From IMG/VR virus record IMGVR_UViG_3300047476_002078, positions 62,001 through 126,000 of that record: a stretch of DNA of 64,000 bases. One strand, written 5' to 3'. Positions 15,690-60,407 of the stretch are shown here, in pieces. Made by a program: the position numbers and the translations under genes. The notes under the pieces were generated by a model that was not told the origin of the DNA, made no database searches, and was given only the letters and a program-made list of their open reading frames with translations. How positions within the stretch are numbered: position 1 is the stretch's first letter; each line of letters opens with the position of its first letter.

Positions 15690-15706
15690 GTGGATTCGGT
15701 ATAGCC
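15690..15706 (+). promoter_or_regulatory. conserved 17-bp phage upstream element (copy 1)
   Basis: GTGGATTCGGTATAGCC, 18 nt before ATG 15725. Confidence 0.7.
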
Positions 15707-16482
15707 TTCAGACAGGAGGTAACTATGGAAGATTTCAAGCCTATTTTAGACAGTATTAAAATTATTTCTTCAATGAAACCAACATTTTGTGGAGAGATAA
15801 GCTCATTAGTTACTAAAATACTTAAAGACACTCGTTTTAGCATTAAAGAAAACCATTACACAGCATACGGTGTACGAATGGTTATCTCTGATACTGAAAA
15901 TGAACAAGATTACGAGATAACAATAAATACAATGAAAAAATAAATGGAAAGATTTAAACCCATCGGAAGGGGAAACTTTATTGACACTGTTACAGGTCGA
16001 GTCGGTGTACCTAACCAAATAAATGTAGGCAACGTAGCAAGCATAGACGACCCCTCCTTTTGGCTTCACATTGAAACAGGAGTAAAATCCCCAATCAAAG
16101 CTCTTTTAGACAAGGGCTTTAGACCTATTACCTCTTGTGAAGGTCATTGGGAAAATTCTAAGTCTCGAAGAAAATTAACAATTCTTTTCCCAACGATCAC
16201 TCAAATAGAAGAAGCTATAAAATTATTTAAACCTCATGTTTTTTCTGCAACAAACAATTATTCATTTTCCGCTAACCAAGTTAAAGAACAAAATCTAGCG
16301 GATAATATTTGGGGAAAGTGCGACAGGTGGTTTTTTATGTCTATTTATCTGAGTGATACCTATGACACAACAACTGATTTAAAAAATCATATCGAACAAA
16401 CAAATAAGAAGACAGAGCTTTTTACGGAATTTATAATCAACCTTAGTGATGAAATTTGTGAAAGTTTAAATAGGAGATAAAT

Positions 16483-16872
16483 ATGAAAAATGAAGAACTT
16501 GTTAAAACTGCATGTGAAAATCTTAATTTTATGTCAAAACAAGTACACCAAAATAATGTGGACGCTGGCTGGTGGACTGATCTAACTACAGGTGAAAAGA
16601 AAGATAGAAACGTAGGCGAGCTTTTATGCTTAGTACACTCTGAAATTTCAGAAGCTATGGAAGGTCACAGAAAAAATTTAGCGGATGACAAACTACCTCA
16701 CCGATCTATGTTTGAAGTGGAATTAGCAGATGCTATCATTCGCATTTTTGATATTGCAGGGGCACACAACTTGGACTTAGGTGGAGCTATTTTTGAAAAA
16801 ATGCAATACAATGCTAAGAGAGAAGACCATACTCTTGCACACAGAATGAGTGAGAATGGAAAAAAATACTAA
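16483..16872 (+). CDS. MazG-like NTP pyrophosphohydrolase
   Basis: ELLCLVHSEISEAMEG...EVELADAIIRIFD motif. Confidence 0.85.
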   Translation: MKNEELVKTACENLNFMSKQVHQNNVDAGWWTDLTTGEKKDRNVGELLCLVHSEISEAMEGHRKNLADDKLPHRSMFEVELADAIIRIFDIAGAHNLDLGGAIFEKMQYNAKREDHTLAHRMSENGKKY

Positions 16873-17441
16873 GCTCACAAATTTTTACAACGAGCTAGAA
16901 AAATTAAGAAAGCCTAAGAGTGACGACCCTTATGATGATAGAGTCACCCACTGTTTACTTATGCACGAATATCAAGGCAAAACACACCGCTTTGATGTTC
17001 GTGGGTGGAATAAAATAAAAAATGGAAAACTCTACATTTCAGTTGTCAATTGGACTATGTGTGCAGGTACAGCTTCGCTTGAATTAGATGAAGAAACCGT
17101 AGATAAATTTATCATTGAAGAGGATATTTTTAAGGCTTAAAAATGAACTTTGTTGAATATGGTCTTCGATACCTTGGAACTGAAGTAGAGGAAATAGTCG
17201 GAGCAAACCCGTGTGAAAATTCAGGTGCGGGATTTGAGAATGATGTTTTCTCATTGAGAGCTTTTTGTTGGTGTAGTGGAGACATAAAAGAGCATGAAGA
17301 AGGATGCCCTCCAAACTTCTTACACAAAAAAACTGGGTTCAGTGTCGAATGGTACAAATATCTTGGTAGATCAACGGAACACTCAGAAATATCACAGAAA
17401 GAATTTAGAAAAATAATTGCTGAGTGTTTAGAGTCCTTACA

Positions 17442-17901
17442 ATGAATGTGTCTCAGTTTGAAGTAAACGTATCAGAAGAAATAATTTTTTCTGTTATCTC
17501 TTTGTTCAATACAACCCCTTTAACTCAGATGTATTCTAATAAAGGTGGATGGTCGAGCCAGCGGTTTTATAAGCCAGAGGAAAACCACAAAGATTTATTG
17601 AATCAAGTATTTAATAAAATATCTGAATTTTACCCAAGACCAAAACTTAGCGACTATTGGTTTAACGTAAATCAGCCTAACTCATTTCACATCTGGCACA
17701 CTCACTACCAAGTCAAATATTCAGGAGTGGTCTATCTCCAAGCTCCTCCAAAGTCCGGAGCTATTCAATTCCGAGAAGATGCTGCAATGGTTTCGACTCT
17801 TCAAATTGAGCCTCGAAAAGGTCTTTGTGTTGTTTTTCCAGCAAATTTTACCTAATTTATCCAATGAATATAGGGTGAGTTTAGTGTTCAATTTTAACTA
17901 A
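17442..17901 (+). pseudogene. 2OG-Fe(II) oxygenase with a frameshifting deletion near the 3' end
   Basis: WFNVNQPNSFHIWHTH...SGVVYL...FPANF. The expected tail PNLSNEYRVSLVFNFN* continues in another frame from 17851, and the distal HxV is missing. Confidence 0.7.
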
Positions 17902-18121
17902 GAGGTAAATCGTGGATACTTATAGAGAAATGTGTGAAAAAATATATGTTGAATTAAATGAATCAAAGTCAGAATTAGATGAAGCAAAAATTCTCATAAA
18001 AGATTTGGTAGATACCTTACAAAGGATTGGATTGTATTCTGATCTGGGAGGTAAATACGCAGGAGAAGTTTTGGAAAAGCATAAAGATTTGATTTCAAAG
18101 CTTATTAAATGAGGTGAATGT

Positions 18122-18769
18122 ATGTACGTCGATAAATACGGTCTTTATAATGTTAAGCCTGTTGTGGATGGAAATCCTTCAGGTAACGATGGGTGGATTA
18201 TAACAGCTTATGCTATAAAAGTAGGATTACCTGTAGAAAGAGAAAAAATTTTACAAGCCTTTGACTTCCTTAAAAAAGATCAAAAAGGTATGCCTTTAGA
18301 GAGATTGCCAAATAAAGCGACTCCTTACCTATCTCGTGATGTAATTTTAGGATTAGTTTATCTTGGAATTTTAACAGTCAAAGATTTAGAAGATTGGGGA
18401 TATAGTTTTTCCCCTTTCCCTCTACCTAAGTTCAATTTCTTCCAAGCGATAAAACAATTTTGGGGATTAAGAGGAAAACACAGAAATCACTTTTGGCAAA
18501 ATCCGGGCTTTGAGCAAGTTTATAGATTCGCTTTTAGTGTTCCTATTGGTGATCGTTATGCCATGCAGAAAAAGTTTGGTAAACCTACGTTGTTTCAAAA
18601 ATTGTGGGGATTTTTTGATTTCATATTGAAACCGAGTGATGATTCCTCAAAACTAATACATTGGTTAAAGTACGAAGAAGTTCCTGATAGAGATGTTTTC
18701 ATTCGCTATTTCGGTGAACAACATCCAATCACATTAGCATTTTTAGATTCACCTCTTTATAATTATTAA
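18122..18769 (+). CDS. hypothetical protein
   Basis: 215-aa ORF with GAGG RBS. No recognised motif. Confidence 0.6.
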   Translation: MYVDKYGLYNVKPVVDGNPSGNDGWIITAYAIKVGLPVEREKILQAFDFLKKDQKGMPLERLPNKATPYLSRDVILGLVYLGILTVKDLEDWGYSFSPFPLPKFNFFQAIKQFWGLRGKHRNHFWQNPGFEQVYRFAFSVPIGDRYAMQKKFGKPTLFQKLWGFFDFILKPSDDSSKLIHWLKYEEVPDRDVFIRYFGEQHPITLAFLDSPLYNY

Positions 18770-18771
18770 TT

Positions 18772-18815
18772 TTGACAACCTCTACCGTAAATTACTAGAA
18801 TTTACGGTAGAGGTT
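18772..18815 (+). promoter_or_regulatory. sigma70-like promoter overlapped by a perfect 17-bp inverted repeat that includes the dcm RBS
   Basis: TTGACA-N18-TAGAAT. AACCTCTACCGTAAATT / AATTTACGGTAGAGGTT at 18777-18815. Confidence 0.65.
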
Positions 18816-18819
18816 ATAA

Positions 18820-19758
18820 ATGAACGTGCTGTCACTATTCGATGGAATATCCTGTGGGCAAATAGCTCTTAACAGAGCAAAAATTAAATATAAAAATTAT
18901 TTTGCTTCTGAAATTGATAAAAACGCTATTAATGTTACTCAGCACAACTACCCAGACACTATTCAGTTGGGGGATGTGACTAAAATTAATTTTAAATCTT
19001 TGCCAAAAATACATCTTTTGATAGGGGGTTCTCCATGTCAAGGATTCAGCATAAGTGGAAAACAACTCGCTTTCAATGACCCTCGAAGTAAACTATTTTT
19101 TGAATTTATAAAGGCTATAAAAGAACTACAGCCGAAATATTTTTTTCTTGAAAATGTTAAAATGAAAAAAGAATATGAAAATATCATAACAGAATTTTTA
19201 GGTGTAAATCCGATAGAAATAAATTCTGCCTTGGTTTCTGCTCAAAATAGAAAAAGACTTTATTGGACTAATATTCCAAACATAACTCAGCCACAAGACA
19301 AACACATTTTTCTTCGTGATATTTTAGAAAAAGATGTAACCGATAACCTATTCGCCATTCCTGATAAATATTGGAAAGGGACTAATATCGAAAATTATAT
19401 AGCTCAATCAGAAAAACCTGTAGCTTTAACTGAAAGAAGAACAGAAGAAGCAAAAAGAATTAGGAAAGAATATCAGAAAAAATATGGAAGAGACTTTTGC
19501 CCTCGAAGAGGAAAAGAATTAGTAGTCAGAAAAGACGGTAAAATGAATTGTTTGACTTCGACTTATTCAATAAAAGAACACACAGTCATTGATGAAAAAG
19601 GTTTTTACAGAAAACTTACTCCAATAGAATGTGAAAGACTACAAACAGTACCAGATAATTATACAAAAATTTTGTCTAATTCACAAAGATACAAAGCCCT
19701 TGGAAATGGTTGGACGGTAGATGTAATTGCTCACATTTTTAAAGGTATAGAAACATGA
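18820..19758 (+). CDS. dcm: DNA (cytosine-5)-methyltransferase
   Basis: LSLFDGISCG, GGSPCQGFS, ENV, QNRKRLYW, LGNGWTV. Confidence 0.93.
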   Translation: MNVLSLFDGISCGQIALNRAKIKYKNYFASEIDKNAINVTQHNYPDTIQLGDVTKINFKSLPKIHLLIGGSPCQGFSISGKQLAFNDPRSKLFFEFIKAIKELQPKYFFLENVKMKKEYENIITEFLGVNPIEINSALVSAQNRKRLYWTNIPNITQPQDKHIFLRDILEKDVTDNLFAIPDKYWKGTNIENYIAQSEKPVALTERRTEEAKRIRKEYQKKYGRDFCPRRGKELVVRKDGKMNCLTSTYSIKEHTVIDEKGFYRKLTPIECERLQTVPDNYTKILSNSQRYKALGNGWTVDVIAHIFKGIET

Positions 19759-20834: not shown

Positions 20835-20898
20835 TTTCCTTGTGGCTCATTGTCATGGTTTTTCATTGCCTTATTCTATTGCCAATACATCCGTATGT

Positions 20899-21041
20899 TT
20901 TAGGGTATCTTGCGTTTTTTGATAATGCTATGTATTAATTCCTAGCGATAGCGTTTAGGGCATTTCACGATTTTTGATAACACGGTGCTTTATTTCGAGC
21001 GGTAGCGTTTAGGGTATTTAGCGATTTTTGATAATGCTATG
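20899..21041 (+). repeat. three imperfect ~33-39 bp direct repeats
   Basis: TTTAGGG(T/C)AT...TTTTTGATAA(TGCTATG) at 20899, about 20949 and about 21003, in non-coding DNA. Confidence 0.75.
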
Positions 21042-21086
21042 CTTCATATAAATATTACAAACCTGATTGAAATTTACACATAATCC

Positions 21087-21542
21087 TTGATAATTAATGG
21101 CATGGAAACAAACAATATCGACCCCTATAAAGTTGACCCTTATTCTTTTAAGTGGGAGCTAACAAAACCTTGCTCAGATTGCCCTTTTGTGAAGTCTTCT
21201 CCTTTGCATGATGGGATAGCCTCGGATTTGCCAAAACTCGCAGAACATATTGAAAGTGGAAACTTTGTACATAGTTGTCATAAAACACACCCCGGAGCCG
21301 ATGGGTGGAATCCTGATTACAAGGGAGCTATTCAAAACTGTGCAGGACTAACTATCATGCAGATAAAAAATGAGGAACTAACGATTCCCATAGTTCGAGC
21401 GAAACTTTCGGGAGAACTCGACGAGTCAAAATTAGATAAGACTGTAGAAACTTTTAAAGACATTAAAGACATGGCTGATTACTATGTGAAGAATCATGTA
21501 AAAATACGCTTTCTTCTTAGGAATAGACATGAACGCAATTAA
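21087..21542 (+). CDS. Cys/His-rich phage protein (DUF6283-like by recall)
   Basis: KPCSDCPF...SCHKT...QNCAG motif. The start codon is uncertain. Confidence 0.45.
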   Translation: MIINGMETNNIDPYKVDPYSFKWELTKPCSDCPFVKSSPLHDGIASDLPKLAEHIESGNFVHSCHKTHPGADGWNPDYKGAIQNCAGLTIMQIKNEELTIPIVRAKLSGELDESKLDKTVETFKDIKDMADYYVKNHVKIRFLLRNRHERN

Positions 21543-21851
21543 CAAACAAGATTTCATTGAAGCTCGATATGTGAACTTTAAAAGGAAACAAGAGTTCCTT
21601 GATAAATTTCTCGGAAGAGGTAACTACATTCTTACTGATCTCGATGCTTACAGCGAAGATTTCGAGTGCCTCATGTCTCATGTGGTGATCTGCGATAAGT
21701 GCAACGAAAACATCTCAGAAAATATCATCATCAAAGATTCTGATTTTATCTTTCATTCAAAATGCACGACAAATTTCAGTAATGTTGTTTCACTCAATTA
21801 ATAAGTGAAAATTCCCAGATGTTAGTATCGGGAACATAAGAAGGAGATTCT

Positions 21852-24620: not shown

Positions 24621-24902
24621 GATTTTAAATGGAGGGGGATTTATTCTCCCTCCTCATTTTGTGGGTTTTTATGCAATTACAAGCTACGGGTGCAATTTTA
24701 AGTTATTCCATTGGATTTGTTCTTATGTACACTTCTTATTTTGGAGAAATTAAAAAACTCTCCGTTAATGAAGGTTTTATCGCTTCTGGATTTTTTATTT
24801 ATCTTGGATGCTATTTATTTTTTTCTTTGAAAAAATCTTAAAGTCTCTCCTTTTCTTCATAACCTTGCTAATTTGCTTATAATAAGCAGAGTTGGGGTTA
24901 TA

Positions 24903-27050
24903 ATGAAAATCGACAAGAAAACACTCTCTGTTTTACAGAAACTAGCAATTACTTATCAAGAGTATAAGAAATTGCATCCTCGTACTAAGAAGACACCCGA
25001 TGACCCTCTTTTTACTTTGGCACAAGACCCAAACAAAAAAGAGTTCAAGGTTAAGCCTAAAGATATTAAAACAGTCATGCCTTCCAAGACACCTACCAAG
25101 AGTGTTCCGCAAAAGACAGACGACCCTGTTGAAAAGTTTCGCCCAAAGCTGGCTCCAAGTGCTTATCAAAAGCAGATGGATTCAAAAGAGCTTTTGAAAA
25201 ACGCTAAGAAAATGTCTTCTGACGATATGGCATGGCATCTTCTTAATTCTAAGATTGGTATGGGTTTTGAGAGTGGGGAACTTCGAGATCAAATGAAGAG
25301 TCATTTTGGTATTGCCAATATGTATGCCATGATGATTTTAAATCCAAATATATCAAAAGAAAGCCGAGACAATATTGCTTCATGGTTGCTCGATAAAGCC
25401 GGAGTATATTTTGTTTCCAGTAAATCTCTTAAAAGATTTCTCGAAGGTTGTGCGAATAAAGGCATTATCTCAAAAGAGATTTGGGAAGAAGAAGCCAATG
25501 GGGATAGTCAGCGTAAGGAAGAGGATGAGATTGCTCAAAATTACACCGCTGACCAACTTAAAAAACTTCCTGCTAAAAAGATTCAAGAGAATTGGAATGA
25601 GATTTGTCAAAACGAAAATCTTCCGACTTCCATGATTCAAAAGATGTTGGGTGATAAGGATGTGAAGAAAGCCCTTGAGTTCATGAAAAAGGGCTACATA
25701 GAAGATACAGGAGCCATGTCTGGTAAGATTGGTGAGCGTAAAAATAAAATTGGTAAAGCGTTAAAAATTCTTTCTCATAAAAATGTTCCTTTTGAAGCGT
25801 TACAAGAAGTGTTTGTACCTTCTCTTAAAAAACATCTTTCAACAAATAACTACAAGGCTTACGAAGTCGCTGAATACCTTGCGAGTCATCCTGACATAAA
25901 CAAGCCAGAGAACAGTGAGCTAAAAAAGTTAGTGCTTCAGGCTTATAAGACTCAGCTTAAATACTACAAAGACGACCCAGAATATGTGGAAGACCCTTAC
26001 AAGTCTCAACGTAACTTTGATGAGCTAAAGCACCCTTCCGCTCCCCCTGCTAACTTAAAGCTGTCGAAGGAAGAGTTCTTAGCAATTTGGAAGATTAGAG
26101 ATGAAGGTCCATATAAGTCTCAAAATGAAAGATGGTTTGAGCATCCTGATATGCCAGATGAGATTATCAAAGAGAGTTTGACTAAAAAAGATAATAAAGT
26201 AAAAGACCCTCTTGATAAATATCTTAGTGACTATTCGGAAGTTCGGAAACTCGCTTTTCATCAAGCTCGAAAAAGAAATCTCTTATCAGATGACGACTTA
26301 ATCAAAACTGTAAAAGCTAATTTGAATCTGCATGGCAATGACAATGAACTTATGAAAAAGTTCGCTGAACAAGCTTACACTTATGGAAAAAGCACTAATG
26401 ATATACCTCGTTATATTTCTAAGGGAAGTGATGAGGAACGCAAAGCTGTAGAAGAACAGATGAAAAAGTCAGCTTTCCATGAAGAGTTTGATTTTGAAGT
26501 CTCCGCAGTTTACAACATTGATAAAGAGCCACACAAAGATTTCGCAAAAACTTCTAAGAAACTTGGAAATGTAATGGAAGGTGTTTACCATGGTACAAGC
26601 TATGCAAACGCCGCTGGGATTCTTTCAGATGGGGTTAGAGTTGATACCGAAGAAAGAACAGGTTCTATGTTCGGTAGGGGTTTTTATCTAGCTTCTGCTT
26701 CTTCTAAAGCTGCCCAATATGCTGGAGAAAAATTTAGTCAGCATGATGGAGATGGGGTAGTCTTTATGCTGAATGTCGCTCTTGGTAAATCCAAAGAAAT
26801 GAAATATGGCAGACCCGAAGGAGATAATCTAAAATATCGTATGTTGAGTCCGGAAGAAAAACAAATGATTGAGGATTACAAAAAGAAAACAGGCAAAGAC
26901 CTTGATGATAAGTGGCACTACGACCATGACTCTGTAACTGCTAAGGCAGGGCAGGCTTTAGATTATGATGAGTTTGTGGTGAAAGACCCTTCTCAGCTTC
27001 AGATTAAAAAGATTGTTATTGTGAAGAAGACACCAAAGGCAAAAGTATGA
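24903..27050 (+). CDS. large protein with C-terminal PARP-type (H-Y-E) ADP-ribosyltransferase domain, leader-bearing
   Basis: YHGT...GSMFGRGFYLA...SKAAQY...VALGK...HDSV...YDEFVV parallels the PARP1 catalytic motifs. N-terminal leader plus YQEYKKLHP module. Confidence 0.85.
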   Translation: MKIDKKTLSVLQKLAITYQEYKKLHPRTKKTPDDPLFTLAQDPNKKEFKVKPKDIKTVMPSKTPTKSVPQKTDDPVEKFRPKLAPSAYQKQMDSKELLKNAKKMSSDDMAWHLLNSKIGMGFESGELRDQMKSHFGIANMYAMMILNPNISKESRDNIASWLLDKAGVYFVSSKSLKRFLEGCANKGIISKEIWEEEANGDSQRKEEDEIAQNYTADQLKKLPAKKIQENWNEICQNENLPTSMIQKMLGDKDVKKALEFMKKGYIEDTGAMSGKIGERKNKIGKALKILSHKNVPFEALQEVFVPSLKKHLSTNNYKAYEVAEYLASHPDINKPENSELKKLVLQAYKTQLKYYKDDPEYVEDPYKSQRNFDELKHPSAPPANLKLSKEEFLAIWKIRDEGPYKSQNERWFEHPDMPDEIIKESLTKKDNKVKDPLDKYLSDYSEVRKLAFHQARKRNLLSDDDLIKTVKANLNLHGNDNELMKKFAEQAYTYGKSTNDIPRYISKGSDEERKAVEEQMKKSAFHEEFDFEVSAVYNIDKEPHKDFAKTSKKLGNVMEGVYHGTSYANAAGILSDGVRVDTEERTGSMFGRGFYLASASSKAAQYAGEKFSQHDGDGVVFMLNVALGKSKEMKYGRPEGDNLKYRMLSPEEKQMIEDYKKKTGKDLDDKWHYDHDSVTAKAGQALDYDEFVVKDPSQLQIKKIVIVKKTPKAKV

Positions 27051-31054: not shown

Positions 31055-31071
31055 GTGGAATCGGTATAGCC
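31055..31071 (+). promoter_or_regulatory. conserved 17-bp phage upstream element (copy 2)
   Basis: GTGGAATCGGTATAGCC upstream of ATG 31095. Confidence 0.75.
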
Positions 31072-31094: not shown

Positions 31095-31541
31095 ATGAGC
31101 ATTAATATTGGCGACATTGTAGAACTCAACGGAAAAGAATATAAAATTGTCGGAACGATCAAGCGTTCCTACCTTCTTGAAAGGGAAGGTAAGCAATATA
31201 AAGCGACTGCCGATAAAATCAAAAAGATTCAACAAATCACAGGTCAAAGAGAAAGCACTCCCACGACTTCTTACCTAGAAAGAAGAGTGGCTTACTTGAA
31301 AATTTTCAAAATAGACGCAAAAATACCGACCAATGCAGAAGAGTGTATGCCTTTCTTTGAAAGATTAGTTGGTGAACTATCTCCAGAAAATCTATCTTGT
31401 GACGGAGAGGCTTCACGCTCACAAGTTCAGGCGAAGCTCAGAGAAATCAGAGGAACTTGGAAAGAACTTGAAACGATTGCAGGACGAAGATATTCAGAAC
31501 AAGAAATTGAAGAACGTATGATGGGAGGACTCAATGGATAA
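31095..31541 (+). CDS. hypothetical phage protein
   Basis: Strong GGAGG RBS. Contains LSPENLSCDGE. Confidence 0.65.
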   Translation: MSINIGDIVELNGKEYKIVGTIKRSYLLEREGKQYKATADKIKKIQQITGQRESTPTTSYLERRVAYLKIFKIDAKIPTNAEECMPFFERLVGELSPENLSCDGEASRSQVQAKLREIRGTWKELETIAGRRYSEQEIEERMMGGLNG

Positions 31542-31799: not shown

Positions 31800-32201
31800 A
31801 TGAATATAACTCCAGAATTAGTAAAAACTCTTGAACCTAATCAGATATTTGTTTTTGGCTCAAACGAAGCTGGCAGGCATGGAGCAGGAGCCGCCAAAAA
31901 TGCGGTTAAGTGGGGAGCTATTTATGGGGTAGGTGAGGGATTAAAAGGTCAAACTTATGCTATACCGACAAAAGATAAAAACATTGAGACGCTAAATCTT
32001 GAAGATATAAATGATTACGTTCTTAATTTTTATAACTTTGCCAAGATAAACCCTGATCTTGATTTTTTAGTTACAGAAATAGGGTGCGGTTTAGCAGGTC
32101 TTACTCCAGAACAAATAGCACCTATGTTTAAAGACACTTCAAAACTGCCGAATGTTTACCTACCTTATAGGTTTTGGAATGTTTTGGTGGAAATGGTATA
32201 G
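31800..32201 (+). CDS. macrodomain-like phage protein (A1S_2505/DUF7831-like by recall)
   Basis: IFVFGSNEAGRHGAGAA...YAIPT...FLVTEIGCGLAG, a macro-fold-like Gly-rich loop pattern. Confidence 0.6.
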   Translation: MNITPELVKTLEPNQIFVFGSNEAGRHGAGAAKNAVKWGAIYGVGEGLKGQTYAIPTKDKNIETLNLEDINDYVLNFYNFAKINPDLDFLVTEIGCGLAGLTPEQIAPMFKDTSKLPNVYLPYRFWNVLVEMV

Positions 32202-32203
32202 CC
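32187..32203 (+). promoter_or_regulatory. conserved 17-bp element, variant (copy 3)
   Basis: GTGGAAATGGTATAGCC, which supplies the TAG stop of ORF 31800. Confidence 0.55.
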
Positions 32204-32255
32204 AGCCAAATCTTAATTTAAGATAAGATTTGGCTAAATATAAATGGAGGGATTT

Positions 32256-32618
32256 ATGAAAGCTATTCTGATTGATGTTGAAAAACGTGAAGTAAAAATA
32301 GTTGATGTGGAAAAAGGAATTGATGCGATTTATGCACAGATTAAATGCGACTGTTTCACAGTTGTAACATTAGAAAACGAAGATGCTATTTTTGTAGATG
32401 ATGAAGGTTTACTTAAATTGGATGAAAATTCAAAATTCTTTTTCATTGAAGGTTATCATCAACCTTTAGCAGGAAACGGTTTAATTCTCGGAACCGATGA
32501 AGAAGGTGAAAGCGTTGATGTGAAAAGTGATTTAGAGGATATAAAGAACAAGGTGCGTTTTCTTAACATTCAAGAAATTCACGCTACAAACCCAGAATGG
32601 CTATCTCAATTCTTATAA
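32256..32618 (+). CDS. DUF3846-like protein
   Basis: IFVDDEGLL...LAGNGLILG pattern. GGAGG RBS. Confidence 0.65.
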   Translation: MKAILIDVEKREVKIVDVEKGIDAIYAQIKCDCFTVVTLENEDAIFVDDEGLLKLDENSKFFFIEGYHQPLAGNGLILGTDEEGESVDVKSDLEDIKNKVRFLNIQEIHATNPEWLSQFL

Positions 32619-36568: not shown

Positions 36569-36585
36569 GTGGAATCGGTATAGCC
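36569..36585 (+). promoter_or_regulatory. conserved 17-bp phage upstream element (copy 4)
   Basis: GTGGAATCGGTATAGCC, 19 nt before ATG 36605 (GGAGG RBS). Confidence 0.75.
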
Positions 36586-37575
36586 GATGAAACTTGGAGG
36601 AACTATGAAAAGTACAACTGCATGGGAGCTAAAAAAAGATCAATTAATCCACCTCGATGGAAAATCTCACCGTATAGAATTTGTAAATAAAAACAAACAA
36701 GAATATTCAGTCACTATTAAAGTAAACGGACAATTTAAAGTCATGGGAGCGAGTCAACATTGCGTTGTTTCTAACGACTTGTTCGGAGCCATTATGAAGT
36801 TTGAAGAAGATGAATTGGATGAATCAAAAATAATTGAACTTATTGAAGAAGAAAATGAATCTAACGAAATTCAATACAGGAGGGCAGCATGATCGGTTAT
36901 TTAAAAGATGGCAGGCAGGTAGAATTTTCTGTTTTTGGAAGGTACGAAGATGATCTAACTATAGACGATATTTACTTCACAGAATCAGAAGATGAAGTGA
37001 GCCAAGAAGATATTGACTACATCGAGAAAACATACGCACAAGAAATTTACGAAAATTGGATAGAAGATCAAATCGCACGAGCAGAAGATTGGGCTGAAAG
37101 AAATATGGAAAGGTGAGGGTTAAACCCCACCTTCCACCTTTGCCAAAATCGAAAGTAATTCTTTTTCATATTTTGGATTAATCACATCATGTTCAAGTTC
37201 TACATCCAGAATAGCCTTCATTATTTCTTTTTCTCTTGTAGTAAATCTTTCCCCTGCTTGAGAATTGGCAAGAAGCTCATTAACATCCCAAGTTTGACGA
37301 GACATAAAGTATGATGCAGGCTGTTTAAGAAGTTCTTCCATGCCTCTTTGTAGCAATTTAAAGTAGTTTAAATCGGCTCCTGCCTGACCTCTCTGGGCTT
37401 TTAGGTTCCCTTTAGCATCTCGTCTAATAAAGCGGTAAAAAATGTCGCTTTGGCTATCAGGATAGTTGTACTGACAGTTTTGGAAACATAGTTTCTCTCC
37501 ATCTGGTAAATCTAAAGTAACCTCAAAACGAACATCAATTCTAGTAGTCATTTGTCCTCCATGTGTGGTTTAAAG

Positions 37576-54530: not shown

Positions 54531-54547
54531 GTGGATTCGGTAAAGCC
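54531..54547 (+). promoter_or_regulatory. conserved 17-bp element, variant (copy 5)
   Basis: GTGGATTCGGTAAAGCC, 16 nt before ATG 54564 (GGAG RBS). Confidence 0.6.
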
Positions 54548-56649
54548 TATACAGGAGAATTTTATGAATTTCATTTGGGTACAATATGGAAGCGAACAGT
54601 GGAAAAGAATGACAAATGTTGTTTATTTAGACTACATGGGGAATAAGGTTCCTTATGGTTGGATTACGTGGGAAACGGAAGTAATGCAAGACGGAACTAA
54701 GATGGCAAAAATGGTTTGGACTCGGTTTTAATTTTGCCAAACACTATTCCGAAATGTAGCATTTATTCATGGAAAAACTAAGACTATTTGCTAAAAAAGA
54801 TATTAAGGTCGTTGAAAGTTTCATCAAAGCAGGACAAGAAGTAAGGATAGGAAAAATATCCCAATCGCAATCAAAGTTCATGCTCATTTGTGCAGAAGAT
54901 AATTTGCATAAATGGTGTGAAATGTCTGAGTATGAAGAATTAGTGGAGGATAGAATTATTTATGACGAACACAAATATTGATACTTTTCAGTCAACGAGA
55001 GTTTTTCTCACTCCTAGCGGTGAGTATGTTTTGGCTTTACCTATTTTTGCCGATGAGAAAGGCTCTATATTTAATAAATCAGACATGGAGAAAATGACTG
55101 GTGTTTCTGTTTCAGTCGGGTTTTATGACCATATAGGATACATCATTTATCACCCAGAATTCGGAGAGCATTTAATGAACAGAGAAGTGACAGATTCGTT
55201 CTTTGAAGACTTAGGTTCATTAAATGAATAAGGTTTTAGATATTCTAAAAGGTTTTTCATTTTGGCAAAAAACTAACATTAAAGAAAGTCGAGTCCTTAT
55301 TGCTTTCCACCATCCAAGAAGCATTACTTGGCTTTTTACAGTTTGGGTCGGCAGAGAAAGATTTGGTTCAAAATTTAAGTTAGCCTGCCATAATGGGAAT
55401 TTTTTAATTGTGTTGTTTGGATATTATTTATCTTTGGACACTCAAAAACAAATGTGGAGAGAATATGAATAACCTTCGGTATATCATTAGAAATGGAGAA
55501 AAAGTTCTTCAATTTTCTGAAACAGTTCCGGAGTATGGCAGAACTGAAGATAACCAATTAGTAGTCATAGGCATGAATACTAATTGGCAGGATGTCCCTC
55601 TATGCGAAGATGAAAACCAAATTTTCAATACTAAAATAAGTGTGGATGCTAAATACAAAGAAGCTTTATCCATTTTAAAAGACATGGTTGATGATGAATG
55701 GGGAACTGACTATTGTGACGGCTTTACAATGAGAGCTAAAGAGTTTTTAGAAAAATTTGAAGAGGGGTAAAGACCTCTCTTTTTATTTTAAAAGAGTCAT
55801 AAAATCCATATTATCCATTAGAGTAGCGTATGGGCTAAAATTATCAAAAACTGCTCCCATATAACTTGTCATTCCATAACCATTTTTATGACATTTATAA
55901 ACACTTCCGCTGTAACCATGAAAAAGATAATACTCGCCTTCTTCTTCCACTTTAGTCACACCGCTATTTAATTTCCACGATTGACCTCCGAGATAACTCC
56001 CTGCCCAACCAGCAAAAACTTTATAAACTTCTTCTTTATCATTTTTTAGTTTTAACATTACCCAACGATCAGGAATATAAGTGCTCATAAAAACCTCTTT
56101 TAACATTATAGACTGTTTGCCATAATGAATATTTTATTTTACGGTAAAATAAAGTAAGAGGTCAAATGAAATACGCTAAAGATTATGCAGAAGATTGTTA
56201 TGAGCATATTAAAAATTTTGATTTGCAGTCGAAGGAAATAATAGTTAGTGCTATAGAATTAGCTATTTTGAGAAGACTAGAAGATTACAAGAATAAAGTT
56301 TATTTTCCTCTGTTGGAAGAAAACAAGCTTTTAAAAAATTTAGTACATATTGCAGGAGAAGATTTAAAAGCTGGGGAAATTGTTACACTATCAGACAATA
56401 AAGTTTATAAAGGAATAAAATGAAAGATTTGCTTTTACAAGCACCAGATTCTCAAATTGACGCTCAATTAAAAAATCTAATAGGTAAATGGAGTGAACCT
56501 CCTAAGTCTATCGAAGTTTTAGAGTCTCTCGATCATTGTGTTAGGTACTCTTCAGGTAGTGATTTTGTTGTTTCTGTTTTGAGAGCAATTCTTGAACAAT
56601 CTATGAAAGTAGAAAATACAGATTATGATACAGTAGTGTCACAAGCCAC

Positions 56650-56973
56650 TTGGAGAAATATTTAATGGAATGGATAATGCTTGCACATTTTATAGGAGAT
56701 TTTGTCGCACAAACTGACTGGCAGGCAAAGAATAAAAGCAAAAGCAACAAAGCTCTTTTGTCACACACTTCAATATACACTTTGTTTTTAATTCCCTTCG
56801 GTTTAAAATACGCCATAGTAAATGGTTTAGCCCATACAGTAATTGATTTTTTTACTTCCAGAGAATCCTCAAAAAGATGGTCTAATGGAGAAGTACACAA
56901 TTTCTTTGTTGTGATAGGTTTTGACCAATATCTTCATTTTCTAACTTTATATTTAACTTGGAAACAGTTTTAA
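56650..56973 (+). CDS. DUF3307-like membrane protein
   Basis: LAHFIGDF..QTDWQA..K...L..H...GFDQYLH. Confidence 0.8.
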   Translation: MEKYLMEWIMLAHFIGDFVAQTDWQAKNKSKSNKALLSHTSIYTLFLIPFGLKYAIVNGLAHTVIDFFTSRESSKRWSNGEVHNFFVVIGFDQYLHFLTLYLTWKQF

Positions 56974-57303
56974 GGAGGTTGTAATGAAACTATCGGAAGT
57001 AATTAAAAAAGCCAGAGTTGGTGGATATTTCAGAAGACCTTGTTGGTCTGGAGAAAGCTGGCTAGTAGTTAAAGAAGATAATTCTATTAAATTTAGGTCA
57101 ACTGGAAATAAATGGACACCTAAGTTGGAAGACTTGGATGCAGATGACTATCAGTATCAAGTTCAAAATGAAATGTGGGAAATTTGGTGTGAAAATGAAA
57201 ATGGTGAAATTTGTATTCATCCAAAACTCATTACTGAAAATCAAAAAAGTGAATTTAATAACATTGTAATCAGTAAAAAGCATATCATCACAAGAGGCTT
57301 AAA

Positions 57304-57522
57304 TTGAGTCAAAATTTCGTGATACCCTTTGGTAAATATAAAAATTACGATTTACTTCATGTGGCTGAAAGTGAACCAAAATATTTAATTTGGCTTGATT
57401 CAGTAGCGGAAGGTAATTTGAAAGTTGCTTTAGAATCATTTTTAAATTCTAAGTATTTTAAAGACTGCTTGATTGAACATGAGTACGAAGATAACGAAGA
57501 AGATATGTGGGATTGGAATTAA
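57304..57522 (+). CDS. small DUF3820-like protein
   Basis: IPFGKYKN...P.YL.W motif. Confidence 0.5.
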   Translation: MSQNFVIPFGKYKNYDLLHVAESEPKYLIWLDSVAEGNLKVALESFLNSKYFKDCLIEHEYEDNEEDMWDWN

Positions 57523-57707
57523 TGGAAATTAAAAAATGCCCTGAATGTGGAAATGATTCTGGAGACGTAGAATTTGAGGATAGAATAAGCCATTTTGCTT
57601 TTGTTGAATGTTTGACTTGCAGACACAGATCAGACTCTATTGAAGGTCGAACAAAAGAGGAAGCGATAGAAAAAGCTATAGACCTTTGGAATAAAGAGAG
57701 GAAATAA
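57507..57707 (+). CDS. Lar-like restriction-alleviation zinc-finger protein
   Basis: KKCPECG...FVECLTC...EEAIEKAIDLWN. Confidence 0.6.
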   Translation: MGLELMEIKKCPECGNDSGDVEFEDRISHFAFVECLTCRHRSDSIEGRTKEEAIEKAIDLWNKERK

Positions 57708-58679
57708 TGAAACCTTTTGAAATAAAAGTTGTAACAGACGGTGGTCTTTGGGTTGAACATAATTACCCTTGCCCTATTTATTCAAATTTAAACAGTGTTT
57801 ATGATATGGATAAAGGCATTTTTAAGCCATCTTGGGTTGCTCAAAAAAGAGGCTGGAATATCGTGTGTGCTGACACTTGGTTTAAGAGAATGATTTTGAG
57901 ATACTTATTTAAAACAGATAATGTTCCAAGTTCACTCTATAAAGAGCAACTTAAAAAGTTAAAAGATTGAAATTATTTAATTTTTCACGAATTTTTGAAT
58001 TTTTCATTCCAATGAAAAATGAAAACAAGTGCAAAATACACAAATGGAATTTTGAAACAGTATCTTGTGGGTATTGTTTGTTAGAAAAATTATTCGGAGA
58101 TGTAAAAATGCAAGATCAAGTCACAGGAACATTTTATCTTGTAAAAAATAAAAATATTGTTGGTGAAGCCGTTGTAATGAGTTTAACCAATGTTGTTTTT
58201 CATCTTTATTCAGATATAAGAAACACACAAAATACGACTTACGAACAAATAACTAAAAAGTATAAACTTGAAAGAGTCATTGGGAATTCTTTCTTAAAAG
58301 GAAAACAGTGATTCAATATTTTAAAGAAGGTTCAAAAGTATATTTCAAAGAAGGGCAGTATCAAGGACTCATAGGTGAAGTCTTAGGAGATGATTGTGTT
58401 TTGCTTACAGTAAAAGTAAAACTGACAGATGATAAAATTGTAGAGGTTCAAAATTTAGTTCTTCAAAAAGCTCCTGAAATAAAGAAAGAATATTTATGAA
58501 AATAAAGCAATCCGAAGTTATACAAAAACTTGCTAAACTATTCGATTCTATACCAGAAGAAGCGAGCAGTTATCATGTATGTGACATGCTTATGTATAAA
58601 GCAGAAAAAATGGGACTACTTATTAAAGAGGAACATGATGAGGAGTATTATTACATATTACAAACTGTAATAAAAACAG

Positions 58680-59297
58680 ATGAAAAAAATATTTAAAGCA
58701 ATATCAAAATTAGAGAAGAAAATTTCTGGTCTTTCTTATCAAGAGTATAAGAAAAAATATCCAAAGACTAAGAAACAGCAAAATGACCTTCTATTTACTG
58801 AACCTTCTAAACTTGTTCGTAATCCAAACACTGACGGTTTAAAAGAATTGATTACTCAAGACTACGCAGACAGATTGGATAAAAAACCTATTAAGGAAAA
58901 AATACAACCCACAATAAATCCAATTTTTAAAAATGTTGATGTGGAAGAAGAACACGATGAAATTTACCGTGCTGCCAGTGAACTTGGGGTTAATGGAGAA
59001 GAATTAAAAAGCAAAATTAAGTCTGCAAAACCTCAACGCCTATCTAATGAAATTTGGAGTCAATTACAGAACACAGATAGTTGGGAAATTTCAAGTAAAG
59101 AAGACGTTGATAAACTTTCCAAAAAATATAACAGAGACGCTGATAGTATTAGAGACGCTTTTAAAAATGGTAAAGCCTTGCCTACTCCCATGATTGCTAA
59201 AAAAGGCAATGAATATGTTTTAATCGGTGGGAACACTCGATTAATGGTATCTAAAGAAATGGGAATAAAGCCTTTTGTTGTAATAGCCGAAGTCTAA
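58680..59297 (+). CDS. leader plus YQEYKKKYP module protein with a ParB/Srx-like C-terminal domain
   Basis: MKKIFKAISKLEKKISG-LSYQEYKKKYPKTKKQQNDLLF, and PTPMI...YVLIGGNTRL. Confidence 0.7.
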   Translation: MKKIFKAISKLEKKISGLSYQEYKKKYPKTKKQQNDLLFTEPSKLVRNPNTDGLKELITQDYADRLDKKPIKEKIQPTINPIFKNVDVEEEHDEIYRAASELGVNGEELKSKIKSAKPQRLSNEIWSQLQNTDSWEISSKEDVDKLSKKYNRDADSIRDAFKNGKALPTPMIAKKGNEYVLIGGNTRLMVSKEMGIKPFVVIAEV

Positions 59298-59316
59298 TTA
59301 TCCTTTATTTAATGCG

Positions 59317-59333
59317 GTGGAATCGGTATAGCC
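59317..59333 (+). promoter_or_regulatory. conserved 17-bp element (copy 6)
   Basis: GTGGAATCGGTATAGCC upstream of ATG 59359. Confidence 0.75.
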
Positions 59334-59358
59334 TCTGAACTTACAAAGGGAGGGCTTT

Positions 59359-59556
59359 ATGATGCCTGATTTTACAAGACTTATGGCTTTTGAAAACGGT
59401 GAGTTAAATAATGAAGAAACTGTTGAATTATTCTCAGAGCTAGTTAAATCTGGCATGGCATGGCAATTACAAGGGTTCTATGGAAGAACTGCAAAAAGTA
59501 TGATCGAACAAGGGTATTTAGACGGGGAAGGTAACATCCTCAGTTATGGAGAATAG
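59359..59556 (+). CDS. small phage protein (DUF7417-like by recall)
   Basis: FENGEL...LFSELVKSGMAWQLQGFYGRTA. Confidence 0.6.
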   Translation: MMPDFTRLMAFENGELNNEETVELFSELVKSGMAWQLQGFYGRTAKSMIEQGYLDGEGNILSYGE

Positions 59557-59572
59557 TGGAATCGGTATAGCC
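59556..59572 (+). promoter_or_regulatory. conserved 17-bp element (copy 7)
   Basis: GTGGAATCGGTATAGCC upstream of ATG 59593. Confidence 0.75.
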
Positions 59573-59592
59573 TTTGAAAACAAGGGGAATCT

Positions 59593-60405
59593 ATGAAACT
59601 TTCTCAAAAATATATCGAAACCATTAAAGCCGAAATGAAAGGCAAACGCTTAGAGAAATTTTTAGCGTCTGTCCAAAGCATAAATGACTCACTGGATGCA
59701 GGAGGATGGCTTCCAAAAACCTCCAGATCAGCCGATTCAGGCTTCTACCAAGGTAGCGGTATTGATGCCAGACATATCGAAAGAGAACACCGAGAATTCT
59801 TTCCACTCTATATGACACTAGCTTACGGCGGAGCGTTTGAGAAAAGGAAAGAGGGTAAATCCTTAGAAGATTTGCTTCCACTACTCGATAAGAAAACTCT
59901 CAAAAAACACTCAATACAATTTGTTAAATCATGGGTAGCTCTTTGTGGAGAAAAGGATAAAGCTGTAGCCTACCTCAATAGCCTACGCCCTTTACCAGTT
60001 AAAACAGAAATTGGTCTATCGCCAAAAGTGACTACAACCCTCAAAGAAATGAATCTCGACATTGATCTTCCATCCATTAAGATGGCAAAAATCAACTACT
60101 TCTTTATTCCAAAAAGAAACCTCAAAACAGGTGAACAAATATACGGTCAAAACGGTGAATGTCTCCTTGACCACGAATACTACGTAGAATGGTCAGAAGG
60201 TATCGTACACAACCAATCAAGGTTCAATCGCTTTGGATACTGTCAAGCTTGCGGTAAAAACATCCCTTCTGGAAGGTTCGTGCCAATCGAAGCCAAAGAT
60301 AAAAAATCGAACAATCTAGTATCTTTCTGGGTCGGGTGCGACTGTGCCAAAAACATCTTCGGTATCAAAGACGAAGGTATCAAACAGGGAGTGGAATCGG
60401 TATAG
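59593..60405 (+). CDS. hypothetical protein with a C-terminal zinc finger
   Basis: CQACGKNI...VGCDCAKN. Confidence 0.65.
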   Translation: MKLSQKYIETIKAEMKGKRLEKFLASVQSINDSLDAGGWLPKTSRSADSGFYQGSGIDARHIEREHREFFPLYMTLAYGGAFEKRKEGKSLEDLLPLLDKKTLKKHSIQFVKSWVALCGEKDKAVAYLNSLRPLPVKTEIGLSPKVTTTLKEMNLDIDLPSIKMAKINYFFIPKRNLKTGEQIYGQNGECLLDHEYYVEWSEGIVHNQSRFNRFGYCQACGKNIPSGRFVPIEAKDKKSNNLVSFWVGCDCAKNIFGIKDEGIKQGVESV

Positions 60406-60407
60406 CA
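60391..60407 (+). promoter_or_regulatory. conserved 17-bp element (copy 8)
   Basis: GTGGAATCGGTATAGCA. Encodes the last codons (VESV*) of ORF 59593. Confidence 0.75.

What the first reader, a model, noticed from the sequence alone, without database searches (positions are those of the whole stretch)
15690..60407. 17-bp GTGGAATCGGTATAGCC element before eight genes: candidate phage-specific promoter class
Seen: copies at 15690, 31055, 32187, 36569, 54531, 59317, 59556 and 60391, all on the + strand with 0-2 mismatches. Seven lie 16-25 nt upstream of an ATG with a strong RBS; the 32187 variant lies about 50 nt upstream. TATAGC sits where a -10 would be, but there is no consistent TTGACA at -35, unlike the separate sigma70-like promoters here. 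None of the downstream genes carries the leader. Inference: a promoter read by a phage RNAP or sigma factor, or an activator box analogous to the T4 MotA box. Its core GGAATCGGTA is also in the D-arm of the phage tRNA-Leu, possibly by chance.
Basis: partly seen in the sequence, partly recalled or inferred. Interest (0 to 1): 0.7.

Follow-up and report, generated by a model that had tools for sequence, protein, structure and literature searches.

The report
Phage-specific promoter motif in a jumbo phage
A 17-25 base sequence found 35 times in an uncultured 356-kb freshwater phage, almost always just before a gene, is most likely that phage lineage's own promoter, but no sequencing run gave transcript 5' ends to confirm it and the protein that reads it was not identified.

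Summary
All 8 copies are at the stated coordinates (0.03 expected by chance). The window belongs to a 355,874-bp phage genome with terminal repeats that carries 35 copies. Each of 34 copies points at a gene start on the same strand; the 35th is followed only by a terminator.

The conserved block is R-GTGGAATCGGTATAGC-M-NN-Y-GAR. Nothing upstream of it is conserved.

The promoter reading rests on comparative evidence:
- The motif is kept in front of orthologous genes in four related phage lineages, including one with 48-51% GC instead of 34%.
- Against a relative about 92% identical in DNA, it changes at 1.7% of positions while its flanks change at 19-27%.
- It occurs as back-to-back divergent pairs and directly after terminators.
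- In the GC-rich relative, 5 of 8 copies place the ATG at motif position 19-22 with no ribosome-binding site. This is the known signature of leaderless transcripts. It puts the start 5-7 bp after the motif and excludes a sigma-54 layout.

No phage RNA polymerase and no sigma region-2 protein was found. The only sigma-related gene is a 209-aa protein with two sigma region-4 domains, next to a NusG-like gene. The best reading is host RNA polymerase redirected by an unidentified phage factor. No usable transcript 5'-end data exist.

The parts
15690..15706 (+). Motif copy GTGGATTCGGTATAGCC (1 mismatch), followed by ttcaGAC and a Shine-Dalgarno site. The gene starts at 15725 (72 aa). Predicted transcription start about 15710-15712.
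31055..31071 (+). Exact motif copy. The gene starts at 31095 (148 aa).
32187..32203 (+). Variant copy GTGGAAATGGTATAGCC. The upstream ORF 31800-32201 ends at the TAG inside the motif. A perfect 12-bp hairpin (32204-32235) follows. The DUF3846 gene starts at 32256, 52 nt after the motif.
36569..36585 (+). Exact motif copy. The gene start with a Shine-Dalgarno site is at 36605 (95 aa).
54531..54547 (+). Variant copy GTGGATTCGGTAAAGCC (2 mismatches). The gene starts at 54564 (55 aa).
59317..59333 (+). Exact motif copy. The gene starts at 59359 (65 aa).
59556..59572 (+). Exact motif copy. Its first G is the last base of the upstream gene's TAG stop codon. The gene starts at 59593 (270 aa).
60391..60407 (+). 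Copy GTGGAATCGGTATAGCA. The upstream gene 59593-60405 reads through it (GTG GAA TCG GTA TAG = VESV-stop). The gene starts at 60431 (129 aa).

Best explanation
The element is the promoter of one transcription class of this jumbo phage lineage.

It is a single contiguous block of about 22-25 bp: R-GTGGAATCGGTATAGC-M-NN-Y-GAR. In the numbering used here, the first G of GTGG is position 0. There is no separate -35 element.

Its 3' part (GGTA...C, positions 8-15) behaves like a -10 element. Transcription is predicted to start at positions 20-22 (the conserved G-A-R), 5-7 bp after C15. In this phage that gives short leaders of about 10-25 nt containing the ribosome-binding site. In a GC-rich relative it gives leaderless mRNAs.

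The motif drives about 34 mostly small genes plus some DNA-metabolism genes: an SNF2 helicase, an ATP-dependent DNA ligase, an AAA+ ATPase and an amidoligase. These look like an early or middle class rather than structural genes.

The enzyme is most likely the host multisubunit RNA polymerase given new specificity by a phage-encoded factor. That factor is not identified. The only sigma-related ORF is the leading but unproven candidate: a 209-aa protein with two sigma region-4 type helix-turn-helix domains at genome 188549-189178.

Shown here: existence, non-randomness, position and orientation, purifying selection, conservation at orthologous genes, and the fixed distance to SD-less start codons in the relative.

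Inferred: promoter function, the start position, and use of the host polymerase.

Speculative: the identity of the factor.
For: (1) Copy number. There are 35 copies where about 0 are expected. The motif's 8-mers are by far the most enriched words upstream of genes, at 8-10 fold genome-wide and 12-23 fold in the left half.

(2) Position. 34 of 35 copies are followed by a same-strand ORF start within 131 nt, and 28 of 35 within 14-28 nt. All 5 minus-strand copies face minus-strand units. By contrast, 14 stray copies of the 3' half GGTATAGC without GTGGAA have no gene start within 45 nt.

(3) Divergent pairs. Two back-to-back pairs (148122-/148157+ and 206232-/206263+) lie 14-18 bp apart between divergent genes. 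That leaves no room for any other promoter.

(4) Terminators. The copy at 139981 follows a strong bidirectional terminator by 12 nt. The same arrangement occurs in relative L043 at 9416.

(5) Purifying selection. In 15 orthologous pairs against the relative L196, which is about 92% identical in DNA, the mismatch rates are:
- 23% at -25 to -1
- 1.7% at positions 0-15
- 27% at positions 17-19
- 0% at positions 20-22
- about 19% beyond that

(6) Orthologous conservation. The motif is kept before the same genes in diverged relatives:
- SNF2 helicase in L068 (91% protein identity), L070 (72%) and L071 (68%; GC 48%)
- AAA+ ATPase, its divergent neighbour, a lipoprotein, a 176-aa gene and an amidoligase in L043 (AAA+ 76% identity; GC 51%)
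- L043 has 8 matches to the relaxed consensus where 0.05 are expected

(7) Leaderless geometry. In L043, 5 sites place the A of the ATG at motif position 19, 20, 20, 22 and 22, with no Shine-Dalgarno site. Their N-termini align from residue 1-2 with this phage's orthologues. From established knowledge, a conserved -10-like block 6-8 nt before SD-less start codons is the accepted signature of leaderless transcription.

(8) Pattern of constraint. In the GC-rich relative only GTGGAA, GGTA and C15 stay fixed. This is a T-A-n-n-n-C pattern like the -12, -11 and -7 positions of sigma-70-family -10 elements.

(9) A parallel case. A more distant jumbo phage, L072 (SNF2 50% identity), has its own single-block element TYCGTATTA (5 exact copies where 0.46 are expected). 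The ATG lies 6-8 nt downstream at 4 sites, and the shared core is TCnGTAT.

(10) Host polymerase. No phage RNA polymerase was found. The phage does encode proteins that act on multisubunit polymerase: a NusG-like protein and the tandem sigma-4 protein. It also uses hairpin plus U-tract terminators.
Against: - There is no direct transcript 5'-end evidence. The only RNA-labelled runs holding this phage are kept as assembled contigs and were flagged 'probably DNA'.
- No factor is linked to the motif. The protein-DNA complex job was not folded.
- The tandem sigma-4 gene sits in a conserved beta-clamp / clamp-loader / NusG-like module. This recalls T4 late transcription, so it may serve a different gene class.
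- An invariant C where sigma-70 needs T at -7, and a conserved GTGGAA only 2-4 bp upstream of the -10-like part, match no characterised sigma factor.
- The tight coupling to start codons would also fit an RNA-level element.
- Gene calls come from my own simple ORF and Shine-Dalgarno script, not from a trained gene finder.
Confidence: 0.72

Rival explanations
1. It is a promoter for an unrecognised phage-encoded RNA polymerase, with a T7-like layout: GTGGAATCGGTATA is the binding and melting region and transcription starts at the G of TATAG (position 14).
For: - A long, nearly invariant single block without a -35 element is typical of single-subunit phage polymerase promoters.
- TATA followed by G matches the -4 to +1 region of T7, SP6 and K11 promoters (from my own knowledge).
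- A promoter before almost every small gene in the 133-155 kb cluster suits a dedicated polymerase.
- Many large ORFs have no detectable family.
Against: - No T7-type polymerase was found: PF00940 gave nothing, and PolA-type motifs occur only in the DNA polymerase.
- No beta/beta' genes and no DxDGD motif were found.
- The largest unknown proteins look structural or are glycosyltransferases.
- In the GC-rich relative, positions 12-14 are not conserved, so TATA-G is not the constrained part.
- A start at position 14 would give 5-8 nt leaders without a ribosome-binding site, which translate poorly.
Confidence: 0.12
2. It is a promoter read by a host alternative sigma factor without any phage factor. 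One version is a sigma-54 type -24/-12 promoter, since TGG and GC are spaced exactly as in TGGCAC-N5-TTGC. Another is a group-3 (sigma-B/F-like) factor, whose -10 element GGGTAT resembles cGGTAT.
For: - In this phage, GG (positions 2-3) and GC (positions 14-15) have the sigma-54 spacing, as seen directly in the sequence.
- The GGTA core resembles the sigma-B-type -10 element (from my own knowledge).
- No phage sigma region-2 protein was found.
Against: - Sigma-54 layout fails. The start would be about position 27, but in L043 five start codons lie at positions 19-22. The G of the GC is not conserved in that relative. No sigma-54 DNA-binding domain is encoded by the phage.
- A host promoter would not normally be invariant over 17 bp, or stay fixed in relatives whose GC content (34% versus 51%) implies different hosts.
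- The exact 16-mer occurs only as scattered single hits in species genomes.
Confidence: 0.07
3. It is an RNA-level element in the 5' leader rather than a promoter. Possibilities are a sequence-specific processing site, a translational operator or enhancer, or an ops-like loading site for the phage NusG paralogue. RfaH-type factors load at GGCGGTAG-type sites and can replace a Shine-Dalgarno site.
For: - The motif always lies within about 30 nt of the start codon, on the sense strand.
- In L043 it sits next to start codons without a Shine-Dalgarno site.
- The phage encodes a NusG-like protein.
- The motif shares CGGTA with the ops core, and two L043 copies read GCGGTAG / TCGGTAG.
Against: - Copies directly after terminators and back-to-back divergent pairs leave no upstream promoter to produce such RNA.
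- The motif has no conserved secondary structure (for the leaders; the sequence itself is not self-complementary).
- 35 copies, one per small gene, is unlike ops or nut-type sites, which occur once per operon.
- Conservation stops at position 22 instead of extending to the ribosome-binding site.
Confidence: 0.06
4. It is a recombination or mobility repeat that bounds gene cassettes and has no regulatory role.
For: - Homology with the relative L196 breaks exactly at the motif start at two sites.
- L196 carries an extra motif-plus-gene cassette (L196 474-775) flanked by motif copies.
Against: - The strict orientation and distance to the downstream start codon, the asymmetric sequence and the extra conserved GAR at positions 20-22 have no reason under this model.
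- No transposase or homing-endonuclease gene was seen in the motif-driven genes that were scanned.
- Shuffling at repeated promoters is a known by-product, as with the T4 promoter-early stem-loop cassettes (from my own knowledge).
Confidence: 0.03

Closest known systems
phiEco32 gp36-dependent middle/late promoters (single element tAATGTAtA)
   Same: - One conserved block with no -35 element, lying next to the start site.
- Transcription starts 6-8 bp downstream (PMC8948821). Here the start is inferred 5-7 bp after C15.
- A shared GTAT(A) core.
- Read by host polymerase with a phage-supplied specificity subunit, which is the mechanism favoured here.
   Different: - The block here is about twice as long (17-25 bp versus 9) and far more invariant.
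- The last conserved -10-like base is C.
- No sigma protein with a region 2 was found in this genome. The only sigma-related ORF has two region-4 domains.
- The phages are unrelated (a podovirus of about 78 kb versus a 356-kb jumbo phage).
T4 late promoters (TATAAATA; gp55, gp33, gp45 clamp)
   Same: - A single -10-region element on host polymerase.
- This phage has a beta-clamp, a clamp loader and a region-4-like protein clustered together. This recalls gp45, gp44/62 and gp33.
   Different: - The genes driven here are small early/middle-type and DNA-metabolism genes, not structural genes.
- The motif is longer and unrelated in sequence.
- No gp55-like protein was recognised.
T4 middle promoters (MotA box plus sigma-70 -10; sigma appropriation by AsiA/MotA)
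   Same: - A phage DNA-binding activator replaces -35 recognition.
- The class drives delayed-early and DNA-metabolism genes.
   Different: - The MotA box is centred near -30 and is separated from a normal TAnnnT -10 element.
- Here the upstream half (GTGGAA) lies at about -22 to -17, contiguous with the -10-like half, and -7 is C.
T7/SP6-class single-subunit polymerase promoters
   Same: - Length, near invariance and number of copies.
- The TATA-G string.
   Different: - No such polymerase gene was found.
- TATA-G is not the conserved part in the GC-rich relative.
- The inferred start is 6 nt further downstream.
T4-type promoter-early stem-loop (PeSL) cassettes
   Same: Repeated promoters flank small hypervariable genes and coincide with the boundaries of gene gain and loss between strains.
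   Different: - There is no associated stem-loop here.
- The promoter is not a sigma-70 type.

Membership tests
Housekeeping sigma-70 promoter | -35 TTGACA-like hexamer 16-18 bp upstream of the -10 element | tested here: not met
   Information content is about 0 at every position from -25 to -2 relative to the motif.
Housekeeping sigma-70 promoter | -10 TAnnnT with T at -7 | tested here: not met
   T10 and A11 are conserved, but position 15 is C in 33 of 35 copies and in 7 of 8 copies in the GC-rich relative.
Sigma-54 (-24/-12) promoter | GG and GC dinucleotides 10 bp apart, both conserved | tested here: not met
   The spacing is present in this phage (positions 2-3 and 14-15). The G of the GC varies in L043 and L071.
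Sigma-54 (-24/-12) promoter | Transcription start about 12 bp downstream of the GC | tested here: not met
   That start would be at about position 27. Five orthologue-verified start codons in L043 lie at positions 19-22.
T7-like single-subunit RNAP promoter | The phage encodes a T7-family RNA polymerase | tested here: not met
   PF00940 gave no match (the control genomes cannot validate this search). PolA motifs B and C occur only in the DNA polymerase ORF.
T7-like single-subunit RNAP promoter | Conserved melting region immediately before a +1 G | tested here: inconclusive
   TATA-G is invariant in this phage, but positions 12-14 vary in the GC-rich relative.
phiKZ/AR9-type multisubunit phage RNAP promoters | The phage encodes split beta/beta' subunits with a DFDGD catalytic motif | tested here: not met
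   PF00562 and PF00623 gave no match. No DxDGD motif, and no D[FYW..]DxD motif in an RNA-polymerase-like context, was found in any long ORF.
phiEco32-type single-element sigma-dependent promoter | One conserved block, no -35 element, start 6-8 bp downstream | tested here: inconclusive
   The single block is shown. The start position is inferred only from leaderless start codons and the conserved GAR at positions 20-22. There is no 5'-end data.
phiEco32-type single-element sigma-dependent promoter | Phage-encoded sigma-70-family protein with region 2 | tested here: not met
   PF04542, TIGR02937 and phrog_351/1740/1190/3512 detect only region-4-like segments of one ORF. A very divergent sigma could have been missed.
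T4 MotA-box middle promoter | Activator box centred near -30 plus a sigma-70 -10 element | tested here: not met
   The upstream half lies at about -22 to -17 and is contiguous with the -10-like half. MotA and AsiA homologues were not searched for.
RfaH/NusG-paralogue ops site | GGCGGTAGnnTG-type element, once per long operon, in the transcribed leader | tested here: not met
   Only CGGTA is shared. There are 35 copies, mostly one per small gene, including copies after terminators and in divergent pairs.

The most novel reading that the evidence does not exclude
A group of uncultured jumbo phages may transcribe one gene class from single-block promoters of the form (specific upstream half)-TCnGTAT-N6-8-start. 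This group includes the present lineage with GTGGAA..GGTA..C and the L072 lineage with TYCGTATTA. In some members the system produces leaderless mRNAs.
Probability: 0.25. Interest if true: 0.7.

Novelty: new member of a known kind. Interest (0 to 1): 0.45.

Why it matters
- **Use now.** The motif maps about 35 transcription units in a phage whose genes are almost all unannotated. It marks a co-regulated gene set that is probably involved in host takeover and DNA metabolism.
- **A tool for this lineage.** It gives a sequence tag for finding and phasing relatives. It also gives a defined 25-bp DNA probe for fishing out the unknown specificity factor.
- **If the novel reading holds.**
- **Genome evolution.** Motif copies coincide with the boundaries of gene-cassette gain and loss between strains, so the promoters may also shape how this genome evolves.

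Tried and rejected
- **RNA evidence.** Two RNA-labelled wastewater runs (X23, X20) hold parts of the phage. They are stored as assembled contigs and were flagged 'probably DNA'. Contig ends at motif copies look like repeat-induced assembly breaks. No transcription-start information was obtained.
- **Protein-DNA complex.** The job pairing the tandem sigma-4 protein with the motif was not folded. It is no evidence either way.
- **Close relatives in public collections.**
  - The GenBank phage collection has none, and the DNA polymerase is only about 23% identical to any isolate's.
  - Scans of viral contigs with the SNF2 N-terminus and with the DNA polymerase found nothing close.
  - The metagenome scan with the AAA+ alignment found only near-identical strains or relatives at 53% identity or less.
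- **Exact 16-mer searches.** IMG/VR and species genomes gave only scattered single hits, at chance level.
- **Relatives at 46-50% identity.** L044, L047 and L048 lack the motif. L044 has ordinary TTGACA/TATAAT promoters.
- **RNA polymerase candidates.**
  - The 783-aa ORF with a DFDID motif is a glycosyltransferase.
  - The 663-aa ORF that matched a PHROG 'polymerase' family is a PARP-type ADP-ribosyltransferase.
  - Of the 1168- and 1153-aa ORFs, the first has no hits and the second gives a DUF4815 (virion-like) lead.
- **Other checks.**
  - Rfam finds only the four tRNAs.
  - The two roughly 85-nt spacers between tandem motif copies do not fold better than shuffled sequences.
  - Consensus sigma-70 sites are not enriched.
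  - No second strong upstream motif was found for the structural half of the genome.
- **Host identity** was not determined.

Full report
**Observation.** All are on the + strand with 0-2 mismatches, against 0.03 expected from shuffles.

The window is bases 62001-126000 of a 355,874-bp virus record with direct terminal repeats and 34% GC. DNA runs from freshwater, lake, wastewater and subsurface samples hold it.

Genome-wide there are 35 copies with at most 2 mismatches, 30 on + and 5 on -. A reversed-pattern control gives none. Twenty-four copies lie in one dense cluster at 133.7-155.3 kb.

Aligning all copies extends the conserved block to R-GTGGAATCGGTATAGC-M-NN-Y-G-A-R. I number the first G of GTGG as position 0. 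There is no information at any of the 24 positions upstream of -1, so there is no -35 element.

**Position relative to genes.**
- With a simple ORF plus Shine-Dalgarno rule, 28 of 35 copies end 14-28 nt before an ATG that has a strong ribosome-binding site.
- 34 of 35 have a same-strand ORF start within 131 nt.
- The exception, at 138831 on the - strand, is followed only by a small hairpin and a strong terminator.
- The five minus-strand copies all face minus-strand units.
- The motif is squeezed against the upstream gene. Six upstream ORFs read through it and stop at its internal TAG (GTG GAA TCG GTA TAG = VESV-stop). Others use a TAG whose G is motif position 0.
- Fourteen stray copies of the 3' half (GGTATAGC) that lack GTGGAA have no gene start within 45 nt. 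The whole block is therefore what associates with genes.
- The motif's 8-mers are the most enriched upstream words in the genome.

**Why a promoter and not an RNA element or a plain repeat.**
- Two divergent gene pairs have back-to-back copies 14-18 bp apart (148122-/148157+ and 206232-/206263+). Nothing else conserved lies between them, so each transcript must originate there.
- The copy at 139981 lies 12 nt after a strong bidirectional terminator. The GC-rich relative shows the same terminator-then-motif arrangement before the orthologous 176-aa gene.
- Selection was measured against L196, a relative about 92% identical in DNA that carries 17 copies in 17 kb. Fifteen orthologous pairs differ as follows:
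  - 23% of positions from -25 to -1
  - 1.7% at positions 0-15
  - 27% at positions 17-19
  - 0% at positions 20-22
  - about 19% further downstream

**Relatives.** No isolate in GenBank is close. Protein look-ups gave a graded series of metagenomic relatives.
- The SNF2 helicase gene (motif at genome 19005) has the motif at the same place in L068/L069 (91% protein identity), L070 (72%; GTGGAATCTGTATAACA) and L071 (68%; GC 48%; GTGGAACTGGTATAACC).
- L043 comes from the same sample as L071. Its GC is 51% and its AAA+ ATPase is 76% identical. It keeps the motif before the orthologues of the AAA+ gene, its divergent neighbour, a lipoprotein, the 176-aa gene and an amidoligase. The amidoligase lies elsewhere in this phage's genome, so the motif travels with the gene.
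- L043 has 8 matches to GTGGAA-NN-GGTA-NNN-CM where 0.05 are expected.
- In this GC-rich lineage only GTGGAA, GGTA and C15 are constrained.
- Relatives at 46-50% identity (L044, L047, L048) lack the motif. L044 shows ordinary TTGACA/TATAAT promoters.
- The exact 16-mer occurs elsewhere only as single, scattered, chance-level hits.

**Where transcription starts.** In L043, five copies are followed by an ATG only 2-5 nt after the 17-mer, with no Shine-Dalgarno site. The A of the ATG is at motif position 19, 20, 20, 22 and 22. The encoded N-termini align from residue 1-2 with this phage's orthologues, and four of the five have no alternative upstream start.

From established knowledge, a conserved -10-like block at a fixed 6-8 nt before SD-less start codons is the accepted computational signature of leaderless transcripts. 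The start must therefore be at or before position 19-22. This has three consequences:
- It fits the invariant G-A-R at positions 20-22 in this phage.
- It excludes a sigma-54 layout, whose start would be near position 27, even though the GG and GC here have the sigma-54 spacing.
- It makes a T7-like start at the G of TATAG (position 14) unlikely. That start would give 5-8 nt leaders without a ribosome-binding site, and positions 12-14 are not conserved in the relative.

The constrained T10, A11 and C15 mirror the -12, -11 and -7 positions of sigma-70-family -10 elements, but with C instead of T at the last one.

A more distant jumbo phage, L072 (SNF2 50% identity, GC 39%), has its own single-block element TYCGTATTA. 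It has 5 exact copies where 0.46 are expected, and 8 with variants, all before genes. The ATG lies 6-8 nt downstream at four of them, and the shared core is TCnGTAT. The geometry resembles the phiEco32 gp36 promoters: a single element tAATGTAtA with the start 6-8 bp downstream (PMC8948821).

**What reads it.** No phage RNA polymerase could be found.
- The T7 family gave no match.
- The beta and beta' core domains gave no match.
- No DxDGD motif is present.
- PolA-type motifs occur only in the DNA polymerase.
- Large unknown ORFs that looked suspicious turned out to be a glycosyltransferase, a PARP-type ADP-ribosyltransferase and a DUF4815-like virion protein.

No protein with sigma region 2 was detected by six different models.

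The only sigma-related ORF is a 209-aa protein at genome 188549-189178.
- It has two sigma region-4 type helix-turn-helix domains.
- It belongs to a family of about 240 representatives.
- It folds confidently (pLDDT 86.5).
- Its best structural and sequence matches are region 4 of SigF, FliA and ECF sigma factors.
- It sits next to a NusG-like antiterminator and the clamp loader. A relative at 56% identity keeps the same order, preceded by a beta-clamp gene.

These genes, together with hairpin plus U-tract terminators, indicate that the host multisubunit polymerase transcribes at least part of the genome. A protein with two such domains could in principle read an asymmetric two-part site such as GTGGAA and GGTA, about one helical turn apart. 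Nothing links it to the motif, however, and its neighbourhood recalls T4 late transcription, so it may serve another gene class. The attempted protein-DNA complex was not folded.

**Genes driven.** The set comprises an SNF2 helicase, an ATP-dependent DNA ligase, an AAA+ ATPase, an amidoligase, DUF3846 and SprT-like proteins, a lipoprotein, and many small ORFs of unknown function. None of the structural or replication-core genes in the right half of the genome carries the motif. An early or middle (host-takeover and DNA-metabolism) class is the natural reading, but the timing is not shown.

**Verdict.** The promoter interpretation is well supported by independent comparative lines, though not by transcript data. 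I put promoter function at about 0.8-0.9 in total. This splits as roughly 0.7 for host polymerase with a phage factor, 0.1 for an unseen phage polymerase and under 0.1 for a host sigma factor alone.

It is a new sequence class of a known kind of element. What keeps it interesting is the unidentified reader and the parallel element in a distant jumbo phage.

Noticed in passing
window 15637-15647, 15661-15671, 18781-18811; genome-wide (G000): A second repeat, TTTACCGTAAA, has 84 copies with at most 1 mismatch. It often occurs as inverted or tandem pairs. Several pairs overlap sigma-70-like promoters, for example TTGACA-N18-TAGAAT at genome 80772 (window 18772) and genome 51635. It looks like the operator of a dimeric regulator. 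No fixed-distance -10 element follows it.
   Followed up: partly
L012 13981-14100 and 14667-14774 (genome 139981-140100, 140667-140774): There are two tandem promoter arrangements. In each, a motif copy is followed by a non-coding spacer of about 75-85 nt, a second motif copy and then a gene. The two spacers are related and share CTACCATGGTAGGGGGAGG. They do not fold better than shuffled sequences and have no Rfam match.
   Followed up: partly
L012 12775-12847, - strand (genome about 138775-138847): A motif variant (GTGGAATCGGTATAGAA) forms the last codons of a gene. It is followed only by a stretch of about 50 nt with a small hairpin and a strong terminator (z = -2.9). This could be a very short RNA or a dead copy.
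   Followed up: partly
L196 474-775 and 1519-2052 versus genome 141183 and 141939: Gene-cassette gain and loss between strains is bounded by motif copies, and homology starts exactly at motif position 0. The repeated promoters may act as recombination points, as with the T4 PeSL cassettes.
   Followed up: partly
L072 (Logan contig of 145,773 bp), e.g. 8676, 13773(-), 20605, 21705: A distant jumbo phage has its own promoter-like block TYCGTATTA, 6-8 nt before start codons that lack a Shine-Dalgarno site.
   Followed up: partly
window 24873-27050; genome 39196-41187 (L040 1196-3187): There are two large proteins with PARP-type ADP-ribosyltransferase domains. By analogy with T4 Alt and Mod they might modify host proteins such as RNA polymerase. 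This was not tested.
   Followed up: no
genome 185369-189178 (L015 475-3178 and upstream): A conserved module comprises a 365-aa ORF (beta-clamp in the L197 relative), a clamp loader, a NusG-like protein (223 aa) and the tandem sigma region-4 protein (209 aa).
   Followed up: partly
window 32204-32235: A perfect 12-bp hairpin (AGCCAAATCTTA...TAAGATTTGGCT) lies directly after the variant motif at 32187, in a 52-nt leader before the DUF3846 gene.
   Followed up: no
window 8775-8785 (- strand), in tRNA-Leu 8709-8795: An 11-nt identity (TGGAATCGGTA) exists between the motif and the tRNA-Leu D-arm. One more stray copy lies at genome 158570. It is probably chance, because this is the usual tRNA-Leu D-arm sequence.
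   Followed up: yes
genome 148680-150400 and 206306-207244; L043, L044, L047, L048: An AAA+ ATPase, an amidoligase and a class-II glutamine amidotransferase (GATase_6) form a gene set that recurs in many large phage contigs.
   Followed up: no
genome 192265-194982 and 306688-307419: A 905-aa ORF carries Hint and LAGLIDADG domains, so it probably contains an intein. There is also a free-standing LAGLIDADG endonuclease gene.
   Followed up: no
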